Origin: Diadema antillarum
Taxonomy: Eukaryota
Direction of reading: 5' to 3'
Length of the DNA: 64,000 nt
Assembly: GCF_040938485.1 (NCBI RefSeq)
Contig: NW_027271302.1
Coordinates: 868,001-932,000, forward strand
Shown here: positions 19,921 to 26,370 of the stretch, in pieces
How the letters are laid out: every line of letters starts with the position of its first letter
Numbering within the stretch: position 1 is the first letter of the stretch
Notes under the pieces: generated by a model
The model's input: the letters and a program-made list of their open reading frames with translations, nothing else
What the model was told of the DNA's origin: nothing
The model's database searches: none
Program-made: the position numbers and the translations under genes

Positions 19921-19958
19921 GGCGGACGTTGCTCTGGATCTTAGTCTCCCTTTTATTT

Positions 19959-19997
19959 GTCAAGCTTTCGGCCAATCATCTGGCCTTCCTCAGGATC
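19959..19997 (-). ncRNA. Minimal hammerhead ribozyme motif, family A copy 1
   Basis: Minus strand GATC-CTGAGGA-A-GGCCA GATGAT TGGCC-GAA-AGCT-T-GAC; core, 5-bp stem II and palindromic AGCU stem III present; stem I only about 2 bp. Confidence 0.6.
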
Positions 19998-21395
19998 TAC
20001 CAACAGAGTAGTTATTATATGAATGACCTGATGTGTCATATAAAGTGTAATACAATTTCATATATTACCACTCTCCTAAATCATTTCCTTTATATTATAC
20101 ACACATCAGTCATTCAATTCAATACAAATATCCAATCTAAACTCATGTCATCATCAAAATAACATCATATATCCAAAAAATATATAAATAGATTCTTTTA
20201 TCATAATATTGCCATATAATAATCATATTTTCTCATAATTCTTAGCATGAAAATCACAAACAGAATCATATACATATACAGTGTTCATNNNNNNNNNNNN
20301 NNNNNNNNNNNNNNNNNNNNNNNNNNNNNNNNNNNNNNNNNNNNNNNNNNNNNNNNNNNNNNNNNNNNNNNNNNNNNNNNNNNNNNNNNNNNNNNNNNNN
20401 NNNNNNNNNNNNNNNNNNNNNNNNNNNNAACACACGTACACACACAACTCCGGTTGATATGATACTATCTAAATCTAAATCAACATATATTACCGAAATA
20501 TGATAACCTTAACCACTGCCAAAAACATATCACCTCTTAAATCAGATGTATAATCAACAACAACATTCTTTAAATTACCTGCGTTGGACGTGTGCCATTA
20601 TTGGCGTGATGTCCTGCATCACCGTGTGCGCATATTCTGTTCAAAAAATACAATAATTAACATTCAATCATAAGACCTCTTATTTTACATATATAATTAA
20701 ACATAATCATATCAGAGCATCACAAAATCATATTCACAAATCCATCATACACTATTTTACATATCATTCATATCCAATCAGATCACCTCGTGACGCTCAA
20801 CAGTAATCATGTGTCGTATGACCATACAATAAATATCAACAAAATTTCACAATAACTAATATTCAATCATAATATCTATTACTTTACAAATAAATAAACA
20901 GTCGGAAATAATCAAGACAAAAATCGCAAATTCATACATTTTCCCAAATTCATCATTATACACCATTATACATTTCATTCGTATCAAATCACATGAACTC
21001 ATTACGCTCAACATTATACGTACATCTTATGATCATACAATATATCGGTACATACAAATGAAATCTCAATAATCACAATATATCTAACCTGAAAATCATT
21101 AGGGTGTTTTACCTGCATGTTGGGCTATATTGTGTCCTGTCTGGTCATGGCCGAGTTTTCTGCTACGGGTGTTCTACTGTGAGTCTGAAGTTAGAGTGAG
21201 GGGTTTATATATTTTTCTGGATATATGATGTTATTTTGATGATGACATGAGTTTAGATTGGATATTTGTATTGAATTGAATGACTGATGTGCGTATAATA
21301 TAAAGGAAATGATTTAGAAGAGTGGTAATATATGAAATTGTATTACACATTATATGACACATCAGGTAATTCATATAATAAATATTCTGTTGGTA

Positions 21396-21434
21396 GATCC
21401 TGAGGAAGGCCAGATGATTGGCCGAAAGCTTGAC
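21396..21434 (+). ncRNA. Minimal hammerhead ribozyme motif, family A copy 2
   Basis: GATC-CTGAGGA-A-GGCCA GATGAT TGGCC-GAA-AGCT-T-GAC. Confidence 0.6.
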
Positions 21435-21995
21435 AAATAAAAGGGAGACTAAGATCGAGAGCAACGCCCGCCTCAGTCCAATTTCTTCCAGTATATATGC
21501 AACCAACAATGAGGCACCGCGCACGTTTGAGACCCAGGAAACTATCGATCGCACTATATATATGTATATCAAAAAGAGGATTGTTATATTCATAGTCATA
21601 TCAGGCATGCTGGTTTTATCCCAACTGTGACATCGATTATTCAAATCGACAAATATACAGATTACTTCCTTAAAAAAAAAATCAAAAAGTCCAGTTGAAA
21701 GGACAAGGAAACAAACATCAACGGGATCTAAAACACAAATAAACACACCAGATAAAAGTGTCAATATCTTTTAAAATAATGCTTGTTATCTAGATATCCT
21801 GTTTTCCCAAGCATTGATGCACAAATTATCAATAATTTTCTTTCAGTAACTGCTACGTAGATTGTTACTGTCATATATTATTAACCGTGAATTGAAATTT
21901 GGTGACGATGTGGATATAATATACTCGGCACACTCGGTAGGCATCACTCATGTTGAAATAGGCACTAGTGCGCCTGGAATATATAGTTTAGTTAA

Positions 21996-22552
21996 AGGAC
22001 AAGTCCACCTTCATAGACATGTGGGTCGAGTTAATGCAGCAATATTAGTAGAATACATCAATGAGAGTTTGAGGAAAATCGGACAATCCTTTCAAAAGTT
22101 ATGGATTTTTGAAGTTTCTGCTCAGTCACGGCTGGATGAGAAGACTACTATAGTTTGTGATGTCATATATTATGTACAACGATAGAAAAAAGTATAAAGA
22201 AAATTCAAGGTATTCTCACTTTTCTCGCATAATAAAAGAACACTCGACTTCTCTCTTTCAGAAGTCAGGGGGAATAATACCCCTAACATACGTCAGTAAC
22301 AAGTCGAAGAAATGAGCGCTTTATTAAAAAAGTCAAGTTTTGTGAAATTCTCTTTTTATTTTCCTTATATCGTTGTACGCATGTGACATCATACACTGTA
22401 GTAGTCTTCTCCTCCAGTAATGATTGCACAAATACTTTAAAAATTCATAACTTTTGAACGGATTGTCTGATTTTCCCCAACTTTCACTAATGTGTTCTAC
22501 GAATATTGCTGCCTTCACTCAATCAACATGTATATGAAGGTGAACTTGTCCT
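21996..22552. mobile_element. Kolobok-like MITE
   Basis: TTAA-AGGACAAGTCCACCTTCATA ... TATGAAGGTGAACTTGTCCT-TTCA. Confidence 0.75.
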
Positions 22553-23335
22553 TTCACTGTCATAAATGTGAAGAGCTATAGAGACTGGATTTAGGTGAAT
22601 AGGTTGAGGGGATTTTTTAAAGGAGTTTCTTGATACAGTTAATCTAATGGTCGACGAGAAATTGTTCTACAGCTTTCATCTCAACTGTGAAGGGCCTATA
22701 TCACCAGCTAGATTTCGAGTTCCTGTTGGGTTTAACTGATGAGAAGACTGAGGGTTGTATTTGATGATCTAAAATTTCTAAATAGAGGTGTAGGCCCTAG
22801 ATAGTCAAGGATTTAATGTACCTTTGGAGTCCGGTTGTTGGGAAACTTTTATACGTATCAAAGTTAGTTTAAAGAAACAAGGCATAAAGTAAAGGGTGAG
22901 GAGGTAACTTTTCCAACCTCAAGCACAAGACGCGAAGCCCTATTTATTAATGAATGAAACAATTGAATAATAACAATAATAACGACGATAATAATGATAA
23001 TGTCTTTTTTATCAATGTATAGGGTAGGCCTACCCTCTTCATTTTTGCCACTGCTCTACCAGAGAGTCCTGCCATTATTATTACCTTAGCAATGCCAAGT
23101 ACAAATTTATAACACAGAAATCAAGAGAGACATGGGAGGTAAAAACATTATCGAGGGACGTAAACGCTGGGTGGGGGGGGGGGGGGTAATTGAACTTTGG
23201 TCCTCCGGTTGGGAGTCGTGAGTCTTGTCCACCAAGCCATAGCGTCCCAGATTGTAGTGTAGCAAAAAAAAAAAAGCTGCCGAAAACTGCATATCTAATA
23301 GTGGCGAGCCAATCGACTACAATGGAGTAAAAGGG

Positions 23336-23832: not shown

Positions 23833-25185
23833 TGGGGAGAGCATAATTTGATGAGATGTCCTGCATCACAGCAATGAGCTCATCTTCTGTATTTGGCTGT
23901 ATGTCCTGTGTGGTCAAGGCTTAGTGTTCTGCTTCTAGTCAGAAGTCACTTTGAATTCAGATTCGTAGTGGAACCAAAAAAAAAAGTATAATTATGTTTT
24001 CTTCATTTTGAAACTCATTATCAAATGTATTTTGTTAATTTACGTTTTTGTGAGTATTACAAATATGCTTTGCTTACACGTTGTACATGATTTTTTATTT
24101 ATTTTATAGAAATGAAAACAAATTTGAATATGCATTTGAAAACGGCAGTTTTTTATTCTGTCTTGGCGGTGCGATAAAAAAGATGAAAATGTTGTCTTAC
24201 TATCAAGTTGTAATTATTTACTGGCAGTCAGTCAGCAATGTAACAATGAAATAAAGAACATTAATTATGTAGGTAAGTGAGGCTGTGTGTTTGCAATGTA
24301 TATGGGTAGGAGATTCAGATTATGGACTATTCAAATTCTATGTCGTTTGCTCTGAATGACATTGTGTGTGTGGATGTAGGACTGATGACATTATTTGTCC
24401 TAAACTAATTCTATTTTTTCGCCGAAAATTCTAATTCAATTATTGATATTCAGGAAATTGATATGACAGGAAAATAATCTATTCAAAGCATTGCATATTG
24501 TTTCTGACAGTGGGCAGAGACTATTCTCCCGTGGTTGAGATTTATTTTGATACTGCATCGAATTTCCGTTTATGCAGTGCCATGTATTTACTGACATGCA
24601 CATTACAAAGTTTATCAGAAGCTATGATTTCTGTGCTTTGGTATATATTTTTTTAAAGGCGAGTACATTTACAAGATATTGGACCACATACCAAACGAAC
24701 ATCAATGCTTTAACACTGTCGTGAACCATTAGCAACCTATTCATATTTAAGATAATCACATTTTGTGATTTTGTGATTCGGAGGTTATATAATAATTTGT
24801 CATAATTTACAGACGTAAACATGTTCACATCTTCGCATATGATACAGAGGTGGGTGTAAAGAGACATGTAAAAATTCTATCATAATATGCTATTCTTGGC
24901 GAATGATTCAGTGATTTCAACATTCACCTCACGGTCAGAATGCATGCAAAATGAGCATGACAAGTCCCATCTCCAAAGACACATGAAACTACGCCAGCCT
25001 CACGACTGAGAATCATTACGCTCCTGCCCTTATGTGTAGGTGCATGTGACCATTGGAGAGACGGTTTAGTTCGAAACAAGTGACAAGCTGTCTCTCACAT
25101 TTTTGCAAGATAGCATAATAGATGTCTCGCAATCTAATGGTACGAACACACTGTATGTGTTATTTTCAGACAATAATTATTTCAT

Positions 25186-25552
25186 GGGTGCGTGTCACGA
25201 GTTAGACACCCATGAATCATACAGCCCAAGAGCTATGCACCCCTCGAGTCATTCAGTCCATGAGTTCGACACTAAAACATATAAGGCCCATAATTCGGAC
25301 AATACGCATATGTGGCCCACGAGACTGACTCATTAAGCCCCTTACTTTGGGACGTTTTAACTTCGTATAGAGCCAGGAGACCATGTTTGCTTTAATAGGG
25401 TCGAACTCATGAGCCTTGTTTGTCCAGTGTCGGCCTTATGGACCCTAGTGTCGAACTAATGGGCTGTATAATATGATTCATGGACCTTTTTTCAATGTCG
25501 AACTTGTATGGACCGTATGACTCTTGTGTGTCGGTCTTGTGGGATGACCCCC
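25186..25552. mobile_element. Short copy of the modular-arm 8-bp-TSD element family
   Basis: Starts GGGTGCGTGTCACGAG, ends GTGGGATGACCC(CC); inverted CCATGAGTTCGACAC / GTCGAACTCATG modules; flanks TATTTCAT / TACTTCAT. Confidence 0.6.
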
Positions 25553-26233
25553 TACTTCATACCGGTTACAAACCTCTCCAGTCTTGTTTTCGTTTCATGG
25601 AACATAATGATTACAGTTAAAATTCACAAATACTTTCTCCCCTTTACCTATAGCGAAAGGATGGAATATTAGTTTTAAGCTATTAGTTTTATACTATTTT
25701 AAGCAGGTTATATTCGATCCTCGAGGGTAACAACTAACTGACCTGTCTCATGAACGGGTAGACACCTGACGTATAACATTGTAGATAGCGAATCCATGGT
25801 CAAAGCCTGGCTAATTTGTTCCAGGAATTTACGTTGTTAAATTGTCAAACAGAATTGATATCTTATACTTTAAACTTATTATACATGGATGACACTTCAC
25901 CTATCCAAACTGTCGTGAGAATAAGCAAGTGGTTTAGCAGGTTTTCTTCAGACCGAATTATTTCAGAATCAGAATAATTTATTTTTTCAAGGTAGATAGT
26001 TTGCCAAACATAAATATGATATTCAGAGTGCGTGGAAGGTGAAAAATGAAGCACTAAGAACCAAAAGTAACACCGAGCCCCTATACGCATTTCATTCAGA
26101 ATGATAAGTACATTGAATATCATGTTGATATACCAGAAACAGTCAATTAATATTTTGTAAGCATATGACTGAACGTTGTCAACAGTATTTCCACATTAAA
26201 TTTTAAGTATTATATACATATAAACACACACAC

Positions 26234-26299
<66 letters not shown>

Positions 26300-26332
26300 A
26301 TGGCAGTGCGAATGTCATCCATTCGCACTGCC

Positions 26333-26370
26333 ATCCCTGACGAAGTGGGAGGACCCCCGAAAATTCGGAT
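26333..26370 (+). ncRNA. Minimal hammerhead ribozyme motif, family C
   Basis: ATCC-CTGACGA-A-GTGGG AGGA CCCCC-GAA-AATT-C-GGAT; 4-bp stem I, stem II 4 of 5 pairs, palindromic AAUU stem III, UUC triplet; lies between two (TA)n tracts. Confidence 0.65.

What the first reader, a model, noticed from the sequence alone, without database searches (positions are those of the whole stretch)
19921..26370. Six minimal hammerhead ribozymes from three families within 6.5 kb, with no Penelope ORF
Seen: CTGANGA-A-[stem II]-GAA-[4-nt palindrome]-H motifs at 19959(-), 21396(+), 23336(-), 23404(+), 23793(-) and 26333(+), with three unrelated flanking sequences. Known: short type I hammerheads with a palindromic stem III occur in the pseudo-LTRs of Penelope-like elements and in retrozymes, and cleave as dimers. 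Inference: this is a hotspot of non-autonomous, ribozyme-bearing retroelements 4.6-11 kb upstream of the RPTP gene. I found no comparably well-formed motif elsewhere in the window by eye.
Basis: partly seen in the sequence, partly recalled or inferred. Interest (0 to 1): 0.8.

Follow-up and report, generated by a model that had tools for sequence, protein, structure and literature searches.

The report
Hammerhead ribozymes in dead Penelope fragments
The six small self-cutting RNA (hammerhead) motifs are real, but they are the standard ribozyme carried in the tail of Penelope-like jumping genes, here present as four shortened, gene-less insertions in repeat-rich DNA, a kind of feature described since 2014.

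Summary
The six minimal type-I hammerhead motifs lie at 19962-19993(-), 21400-21431(+), 23340-23370(-), 23408-23438(+), 23797-23828(-) and 26337-26366(+). A strict descriptor finds five of them, against 0.013 expected from dinucleotide shuffles. A covariance model built only from other ribozyme families of this genome ranks the six as hits 1-5 and 7 of the window.

They are passengers of Penelope-like retroelement (PLE) tails. Family A (19921-21569) is a head-to-head pair of 5'-truncated copies. Elsewhere in the genome its paralogues follow a GIY-YIG open reading frame (with a weak, sub-cut-off RT match). The motif at 23797(-) is a diverged relative of family A. Families B and C are short head-to-head stubs, and C sits inside a (TA)n tract. 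All have the published PLE signatures: an unpaired base after A9, G10.1-C11.1, a palindromic helix III, inverted truncated copies and a one-sided tail.

The genome holds at least 4,555 exact matches to two such patterns, against 13 for reversed controls. The window has no PLE ORF and no tandem repeats, so these are not retrozymes. Several copies carry decay mutations. No RNA data were available. The scan has made the same kind of finding repeatedly elsewhere in this genome. It is an ordinary, already described kind of feature; only the local density is unusual.

The parts
19921..21206 (-). Family A Penelope-like element tail (3' UTR only). It is 5'-truncated within the last ~10 codons of the GIY-YIG ORF, spans assembly gap 20289-20428, and its outer end runs into N run 19775-19920.
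   Evidence: It is colinear with the 3' UTR that follows the GIY-YIG ORF (weak RT match) in L037, and with L038-L041. tblastn places the ORF's last 10 residues at 21203-21174.
19962..19993 (-). Minimal hammerhead, family A: core intact, 6-bp helix II, AGCU helix III, H17 = U, helix I only 2 bp.
   Evidence: (E 1.8e-9)
21204..21569 (+). Short inverted 5'-truncated family A copy, head-to-head with the left copy. It carries the one-sided tail extension beyond 21498.
   Evidence: The inverted repeat is 260 nt and 97% complementary. Within pairs, one paralogue arm ends at 21498 and the other at 21569.
21400..21431 (+). Minimal hammerhead, family A, with the same sequence as the motif at 19962(-).
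23256..23405 (-). Family B arm, starting about 35 nt upstream of its ribozyme and ending about 84 nt after the cleavage site.
   Evidence: Copy extents in 11 loci.
23340..23370 (-). Minimal hammerhead, family B: core intact, 6-bp helix II, H17 = C. Helix I is broken by a G-to-A change relative to the family's usual AGGC/GCCU.
   Evidence: E 1.9e-3
23406..23458 (+). Family B inverted stub, starting 2 nt upstream of its ribozyme core and ending 20 nt after the cleavage site.
23408..23438 (+). Minimal hammerhead, family B, decayed copy: helix II reduced to 4 bp and no helix I.
   Evidence: E 0.11
23704..23933 (-). Compact, diverged relative of family A (A'), 5'-truncated. The boundaries are approximate.
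   Evidence: 79% identity over 130 nt to 21397-21521, plus two upstream UTR blocks. Direct repeats D3 and D4.
23797..23828 (-). Minimal hammerhead A', the best formed of the six: 4-bp helix I, 6-bp helix II, AGCU, H17 = A.
   Evidence: E 1.6e-9. The single-strand fold reproduces helices I and II.
26297..26477 (+). Family C insertion inside a (TA)n tract. It consists of an 18-20 nt inverted stub (26297-26316, minus sense) and a 161-nt arm (26317-26477).
   Evidence: (TA)n flanks lie at 26230-26296 and 26478-26544.
26337..26366 (+). Minimal hammerhead, family C: core intact, 4-bp helix I, AAUU helix III, H17 = C. Helix II carries one G-to-T change that gives a U.C mismatch.
   Evidence: E 2.2e-5

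Best explanation
The region holds four separate insertions of the 3' ends of Penelope-like retroelements (PLEs):
- a family A head-to-head pair,
- a family B head-to-head stub pair,
- a diverged relative of family A,
- a family C stub pair inside a (TA)n microsatellite.

Each tail carries the element's own minimal type-I hammerhead ribozyme about 70-140 nt before its 3' end.

Shown here: the anatomy of the copies, their copy numbers, the link of family A to a GIY-YIG open reading frame (RT match below the Pfam cut-off), and covariation of the ribozyme helices across families.

Inferred from the literature: in an active element the ribozyme lies in the pseudo-LTR. It is thought to pair with a second copy through its 4-nt palindrome and cut read-through or tandem transcripts after H17. 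The RT/GIY-YIG protein then inserts a usually 5'-truncated cDNA, often with an inverted truncated partner and a one-sided tail.

Inferred for this locus: the copies have no ORF, sit as inverted rather than tandem pairs, and several carry helix mutations. They are most likely inert relics and not working ribozymes or regulators of the neighbouring gene.
For: Motif statistics:
- Strict descriptor: 5 hits against 0.013 in shuffles.
- Genome-wide exact pattern counts: 2332 (AGCU class) and 2223 (AAUU class), against 9 and 4 for reversed controls.

Link to PLEs:
- Family A arms flank GIY-YIG ORFs, one also with a weak, sub-cut-off RT match, in L037. They sit beside ORF remnants in L003-L005 and L038-L041.
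- The genome has at least 146 GIY-YIG matches, with open frames up to 1031 aa.
- Single ORFs with RVT_1 plus a C-terminal GIY-YIG domain are followed 0.7-1.0 kb later by a minimal hammerhead, including the published U3-A8 covariant.

Structure:
- Across 12 ribozymes of other families, 89.7% of cells pair, against 61% when shuffled and 31-38% when slid. Nine of 10 pairs show changes on both sides.
- The model built from those 12 finds all six window motifs.
- Within family A, helix II position 5 runs C-G, U.G, U.U, A-U across subfamilies.

PLE insertion signatures:
- Inverted (-,+) pairs in all three families.
- Variable 5' truncation points in C and B.
- A one-sided tail: A ends at 21498 or 21569, and C arms end at query 177-190 or 233.
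- C copies lie in (TA)n.

These match Cervera & de la Pena 2014 (PMC4209133), Craig et al. 2021 (PMC8557442) and Frangieh et al. 2024 (PMC11167929).

Decay:
- The paralogous segment L014 has lost the core of its A' ribozyme.
- Several B copies carry G8-to-A at a CpG.
Against: - For families B and C no copy with an RT/GIY-YIG ORF was found among 11-12 sampled loci each. B has only a weak 37-residue GIY-YIG-like remnant next to one copy (E about 1e-4; Pfam negative).
- Rfam's curated hammerhead models give no hit.
- Cleavage activity and transcription are untested, because no RNA run was listed.
- Helix I is only 2 bp in the family A copies.
- The local density of six motifs in 6.5 kb is far above the genome mean.
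Confidence: 0.88

Rival explanations
1. Families B and C (not A) are short non-autonomous elements, a few hundred bases long, with their own 5' ends. They would borrow the PLE machinery, making them dispersed relatives of animal non-LTR retrozymes and not truncated copies of an autonomous PLE.
For: - Every sampled B and C copy is short.
- In the best-scoring C matches the 5' ends lie 15-58 nt upstream of the ribozyme, and none could be seen further out.
- No ORF is linked to either family.
- A 2026 preprint argues that animal retrozymes derive from PLE pseudo-LTRs (10.64898/2026.07.22.740005).
Against: - The apparent 5' limit is set by the query, because L026's copy ends there.
- Several pairs leave 75-145 nt unaccounted for between their arms, so longer copies probably exist.
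- 5' ends vary as expected for truncation.
- No tandem arrays were seen among the matches.
- The ribozymes are the minimal PLE type.
Confidence: 0.22
2. The cluster is an exapted set of working ribozymes that processes or regulates transcripts upstream of the fn3-repeat (putative receptor phosphatase) gene.
For: Only position supports this. The cluster lies 4.6-11 kb upstream of fn3 exons on the + strand. On the minus strand three motifs share an orientation and the AGCU palindrome.
Against: - The copies carry helix mutations relative to their families.
- The paralogous segment has lost its ribozyme core.
- Thousands of identical-type copies are scattered through the genome.
- There is no expression evidence.
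Confidence: 0.03
3. The motifs are chance matches to a loose descriptor.
For: Rfam's hammerhead models are silent. One structureless regex hit at 24382 shows that the bare core pattern can occur by chance.
Against: - Shuffles give 0.013 hits against 5 observed.
- Pattern against reversed control is 4555 against 13 genome-wide.
- Covariation is strong.
- An independent-family model detects all six motifs.
Confidence: 0.01

Closest known systems
Minimal hammerhead ribozymes of Penelope-like elements (Cervera & de la Pena 2014, PMC4209133)
   Same: - CUGANGA and GAAA core.
- An unpaired base between A9 and G10.1.
- The G10.1-C11.1 pair.
- A long helix II (5-6 bp) and a short helix I.
- A 4-nt palindrome in place of a helix III hairpin.
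- Location in the element's terminal repeat, with thousands of mostly solitary or opposite-strand paired copies per genome.
- The U3-A8 covariant is present in the same genome.
   Different: Nothing of substance differs. These particular sequence families were not found described in the papers searched. In this genome the ribozyme sits 0.7-1.3 kb downstream of the ORF, in a long 3' UTR.
PLE insertion architecture: 5' truncation, inverted truncated partner, one-sided tail, microsatellite bias (Craig et al. 2021, PMC8557442; Frangieh et al. 2024, PMC11167929)
   Same: - Head-to-head (-,+) pairs in all three families.
- Variable 5' ends.
- One arm longer at its 3' end.
- Family C inserted in (TA)n.
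   Different: The tails measured here are 47-71 nt, against the published 30-40 bp. The measurement rests on BLAST end points, which are approximate and may include TA-rich target sequence.
Animal non-LTR retrozymes (Cervera & de la Pena 2020, PMC7229834)
   Same: Both are type I hammerhead-bearing, ORF-less repeats of a few hundred bases in an invertebrate genome, probably dependent on PLE enzymes.
   Different: Retrozymes are direct tandem repeats with canonical hammerheads (loop 1-loop 2 contacts) and are expressed as circular RNAs. Here the copies are inverted or solitary, the ribozymes are the minimal variant, and no RNA data exist.

Membership tests
Hammerhead ribozyme, minimal type I (PLE) variant | Catalytic core C3-U4-G5-A6-N7-G8-A9 and G12-A13-A14, with cleavage-site H17 | tested here: met
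   All six motifs have an intact core.
Hammerhead ribozyme, minimal type I (PLE) variant | Unpaired nucleotide between A9 and G10.1, and a G10.1-C11.1 pair at the base of helix II | tested here: met
   All six have the extra A and the G-C base pair. The same holds in all other families of this genome that were scanned.
Hammerhead ribozyme, minimal type I (PLE) variant | Helix II supported by compensatory changes | tested here: met
   Helix II: 96.4% of cells paired, and 4 of 5 pairs changed on both sides across 12 sequences. Five window copies have 4-6 bp. The C copy has one mismatch.
Hammerhead ribozyme, minimal type I (PLE) variant | Palindromic 15.1-16.1 tetranucleotide in place of helix III (dimer interface) | tested here: met
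   AGCU in five motifs and AAUU in one.
Hammerhead ribozyme, minimal type I (PLE) variant | Helix I of about 4-5 bp | tested here: inconclusive
   A' and C have 4 bp, A has 2 bp, B(-) is interrupted and B(+) has none. Across families helix I covaries, with 79% of cells paired.
Hammerhead ribozyme, minimal type I (PLE) variant | Self-cleavage after H17, as a dimer | not testable with these tools
   No RNA runs were listed. Thermodynamic folding is uninformative about the dimer.
Rfam hammerhead families (curated models) | Score at or above the gathering threshold | tested here: not met
   No hammerhead hit, even at E<=10. The models expect a helix III hairpin.
Endonuclease-positive Penelope-like element | [quoted passage not shown] | tested here: not met
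   Not met in the window: only the last ~10 codons remain, at 21174-21203. Family A paralogues carry GIY-YIG above the Pfam cut-off but only a sub-cut-off RVT_1 match (16.9 vs 29.6 bits). Other PLE families of the genome have both in one ORF. No link was shown for B or C.
Endonuclease-positive Penelope-like element | Hammerhead in the terminal repeat downstream of the ORF | tested here: met
   for family A; for other families.
Endonuclease-positive Penelope-like element | 5' truncation, an adjacent inverted truncated copy, and a one-sided tail | tested here: met
Animal non-LTR retrozyme | Direct tandem repeats of 150-450 bp, each with a hammerhead | tested here: not met
   No tandem direct copies in the window or among the genome matches.
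Animal non-LTR retrozyme | Canonical type I hammerhead with loop 1-loop 2 contacts | tested here: not met
   There is no closed loop 1, and helix I is short. This is the minimal variant.
Animal non-LTR retrozyme | Expression as small circular RNAs | not testable with these tools
   No RNA run was listed.

The most novel reading that the evidence does not exclude
Families B and C are not debris of autonomous elements. They would be dispersed, short, ORF-less hammerhead elements with their own 5' ends that use PLE enzymes in trans. That would make them a non-tandem counterpart, or a precursor, of animal retrozymes in this lineage.
Probability: 0.15. Interest if true: 0.35.

Novelty: new member of a known kind. 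Interest (0 to 1): 0.15.

Why it matters
It matters little beyond annotation. The result shows that this genome carries thousands of Penelope-type minimal hammerheads in many sequence families. These give a clean natural covariation set for helices I and II and for the C3-G8/U3-A8 pair. The result also explains a recurring class of palindromes and foldbacks that the scan keeps flagging in this genome. Such stretches should be masked as PLE tails and not treated as candidate regulatory ribozymes.

Tried and rejected
- Rfam at gathering and at E<=10 gave no hammerhead hit. The hits it did give were microsatellite or hairpin artefacts, such as miRNA-like matches on (TA)n and on the B foldback.
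- ORF link for B: a 37-residue GIY-YIG-like remnant lies beside one copy in L020 (E about 1e-4). Pfam does not confirm it, and the intervening 900 nt are not shared by other B loci. I treat it as suggestive only.
- I considered that B foldbacks multiply as units, because several loci share one junction and one arm with G8-to-A. This is rejected. Those loci are copies of one segment of more than 3 kb (98% identity), and the G8-to-A change lies in a CpG and recurs independently.
- The ribozyme is not more conserved than the rest of the family A tail: it ranks 183 of 264 among 32-nt windows. Only the core bases are slightly more conserved (0.97 against 0.91).
- Dimer co-folding gave only trivial self-duplexes.
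- Alignment A2 was discarded because it misplaced helix II gaps.

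
Full report
**1. Observation**

Reading 19800-26500 and a regex scan of the whole window confirm six motifs. Each has the form CTGANGA, one extra A, a hairpin, GAA, a 4-nt ANNT palindrome and H. They lie at 19962-19993(-), 21400-21431(+), 23340-23370(-), 23408-23438(+), 23797-23828(-) and 26337-26366(+). There are none outside 19.9-26.4 kb.

With a helix II of at least 4 bp required, five of the six pass. Three hundred dinucleotide-preserving shuffles give a mean of 0.013 hits. 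The sixth, at 26337, fails only through a U.C mismatch. Most sampled copies of its family have a perfect 5-bp G/C helix there.

Rfam finds no hammerhead at gathering thresholds or at E<=10. That is expected for variants that lack a helix III hairpin.

**2. The gaps**

The gap at 20289-20428 lies inside one repeat copy. Its flanks match paralogous copies in the same order and orientation. The closest paralogue (L040/L005) has 110 nt between them, and more distant ones have extra internal duplications of about 96-190 nt there. The flanks are therefore consistent with one continuous element. The length of the gap is unknown, nothing was filled in, and no motif is within 290 nt of it. A second N run (19775-19920) removes the outer end of the left arm.

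**3. What the flanks are**

All three flank families are high-copy repeats in a 1.75-Gb assembly. First-look candidates number 660 (A), 1906 (B) and 1247 (C). Matches very often lie as close (-,+) inverted pairs with the ribozymes reading outward.

*Family A.* In L037 the two arms enclose two ORFs. One has a GIY-YIG domain (27 bits, cut-off 22.6) and a weak RVT_1 match. The other has a GIY-YIG domain. ORF remnants also adjoin the arms in L003-L005 and L038-L041. The canonical order is ORF, about 0.8 kb of UTR (the reverse complement of window 20431-21206), about 230 nt, then the 300-370-nt terminal block with the ribozyme.

The window therefore holds:
- a minus-strand copy from 21206 down to 19921, beginning in the last ~10 codons of the ORF;
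- a short plus-strand copy, 21204-21569, joined to it head-to-head. The arms are 97% complementary over 260 nt.

The motif at 23797(-) belongs to a compact, diverged relative. It shows 79% identity over 130 nt, plus two upstream UTR blocks.

*Family B.* The unit at 23256-23458 is a head-to-head stub pair. Different loci have different junction points, 2-35 nt upstream of the core.

*Family C.* The unit at 26297-26477 is an 18-20-nt stub plus a 161-nt arm, inserted in a (TA)n tract. Other copies start 15-58 nt upstream of the core, and many also lie in (TA)n.

*Tails.* In pairs, one arm carries a 3' extension. Family A arms end at 21498 or 21569. Family C arms end at query position 177-190 or 233. 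Family B arms end 20 or 84 nt after the cleavage site.

**4. The genome is full of such elements**

A GIY-YIG profile search gives 146 matches, with open frames up to 1031 aa, often as inverted or tandem neighbours. [quoted passage not shown] L065 has the same with a weaker RT match.

About 0.7-1.0 kb downstream of the endonuclease domain, most of the 30 sampled GIY-YIG loci have a minimal hammerhead with the same architecture (19 by the scan that admits U3-A8 cores). Several families use the U3-A8 core covariant.

Exact pattern counts in the genome are:
- 2332 for the AGCU class, against 9 for the reversed control;
- 2223 for the AAUU class, against 4 for the reversed control.

**5. Is the RNA structure real?**

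I aligned twelve ribozymes from families other than A, B and C. On the stated structure, 89.7% of cells pair, against 61% after shuffling and 31-38% when the partners are slid. Nine of ten pairs change on both sides, including C3-G8 to U3-A8.

A covariance model built from these twelve was run over the window with filters off. It ranks the six motifs first to fifth and seventh, with E 1.6e-9, 1.8e-9, 1.8e-9, 2.2e-5, 1.9e-3 and 0.11. Its only other hit below E 0.1 is 55729-55765(-), which has no helix II.

Within family A, subfamilies show the series C-G, U.G, U.U, A-U at one helix II position.

**6. State of the window copies**

| Copy | Condition |
|---|---|
| A' (23797, -) | Best formed: helix I 4 bp, helix II 6 bp. 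Its single-strand fold reproduces both helices. |
| A (19962, - and 21400, +) | Helix I of only 2 bp; one sampled subfamily has 3 bp. |
| B (23340, -) | A-for-G change in helix I. |
| B (23408, +) | Helix II weakened and helix I lost. |
| C (26337, +) | One helix II mismatch. |

All pairs are inverted, so a single transcript carries one sense ribozyme and one antisense copy, not a tandem pair.

The segment 22967-24959 is duplicated elsewhere (L014, 89% identity over 2 kb). There the A' ribozyme core is destroyed. Several B copies carry G8-to-A at a CpG. Both point to neutral decay after insertion.

No RNA run could be listed, so expression and cleavage are untested.

**7. Comparison with what is known**

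Cervera and de la Pena (2014, PMC4209133) describe this motif in PLE terminal repeats. Their description includes the unpaired base after A9, the conserved G10.1-C11.1 pair, the palindromic 15.2-16.2 positions, a long helix II and a short helix I. It also includes pairs on opposite strands 100-700 bp apart, thousands of mostly solitary copies 'probably related to truncated PLEs', the U3-A8 covariant, and low activity in vitro that needs dimers.

Craig et al. (2021, PMC8557442) describe 5' truncation, the inverted truncated partner, the one-sided tail and the microsatellite bias. Frangieh et al. (2024, PMC11167929) explain the tail by internal initiation of reverse transcription.

Animal retrozymes (PMC7229834) are direct tandem repeats with canonical hammerheads and circular RNAs. 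The window has no tandem copies and only minimal variants, so it does not qualify. A 2026 preprint derives retrozymes from PLE terminal repeats. That keeps a non-autonomous status for B and C conceivable, since I could not link either to an ORF.

**8. The 'hotspot'**

The two patterns together occur 4555 times in 1.755 Gb. That gives about 0.017 expected per 6.5 kb, against six observed.

The six motifs are four insertion events. The region also holds another foldback repeat (21990-22558) and part of a duplicated segment. The partial genome listings show comparable clusters, for example four motifs of two families at C7:3078590-3087464. I could not run a proper clustering test.

The neighbouring gene has fn3 exons from 31.6 to 46.9 kb. 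A phosphatase domain was not seen in the long ORFs tested.

**9. Earlier notes of this scan**

Earlier notes on other parts of this genome report many head-to-head Penelope-type hammerhead stubs, often in (TA)n, and reach the same reading. My tests were made independently on this window and agree. Those notes call the organism a sea urchin; I did not test that.

**Verdict**

The motifs are ordinary truncated PLE tails of an already described kind. They are not retrozymes, and nothing shows that they function at this locus.

Noticed in passing
window 21990-22558: A separate foldback repeat with arms 21990-22168 and 22381-22558 (82% complementary). Related copies occur in L016, L017 and L026. 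It looks like a small inverted-repeat transposon unrelated to the hammerhead families.
   Followed up: no
window 22946-24959 and L014 (G000:C607:3214173-3217330): A segment of at least 2 kb is duplicated at 89% identity. It includes the B stub pair, the A' copy and about 1 kb of non-repeat flank. In the paralogue the A' hammerhead core is destroyed.
   Followed up: partly
window 55729-55765 (-): A weak hit of the custom hammerhead model (E about 0.009) with a U3-A8-type core but no helix II. It is probably chance or a badly decayed copy.
   Followed up: no
window 20650-20892 and the gap at 20289-20428: The family A 3' UTR contains a 199-nt-spaced internal direct repeat. Paralogues (L037-L041) carry extra 96-190-nt duplications next to the position of the assembly gap, which may be why the assembly broke there.
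   Followed up: partly
window 31652-46896 (+): At least five ORF-sized exons have fibronectin type III matches (E 2e-5 to 5e-4).
   Followed up: partly
family B copies in L015-L024: Many copies carry G8-to-A (CTGACAA) in the catalytic core. N7 = C makes a CpG with G8, so this looks like recurrent deamination decay, not a functional variant. L015, L018 and L019 are copies of one segment of more than 3 kb (98% identity).
   Followed up: partly
L026:1431-1466: A family C copy abuts a (CCCTA)n tract instead of (TA)n, so the family's target is not only TA repeats.
   Followed up: no
L004:3-866 and L004:1204-1230: A second, distant PLE ORF (31% identical to the family A protein; GIY-YIG match weak, below the Pfam cut-off) has its own U3-A8 minimal hammerhead. 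It lies directly upstream of a family A tail, which suggests nested or serial PLE insertions.
   Followed up: no
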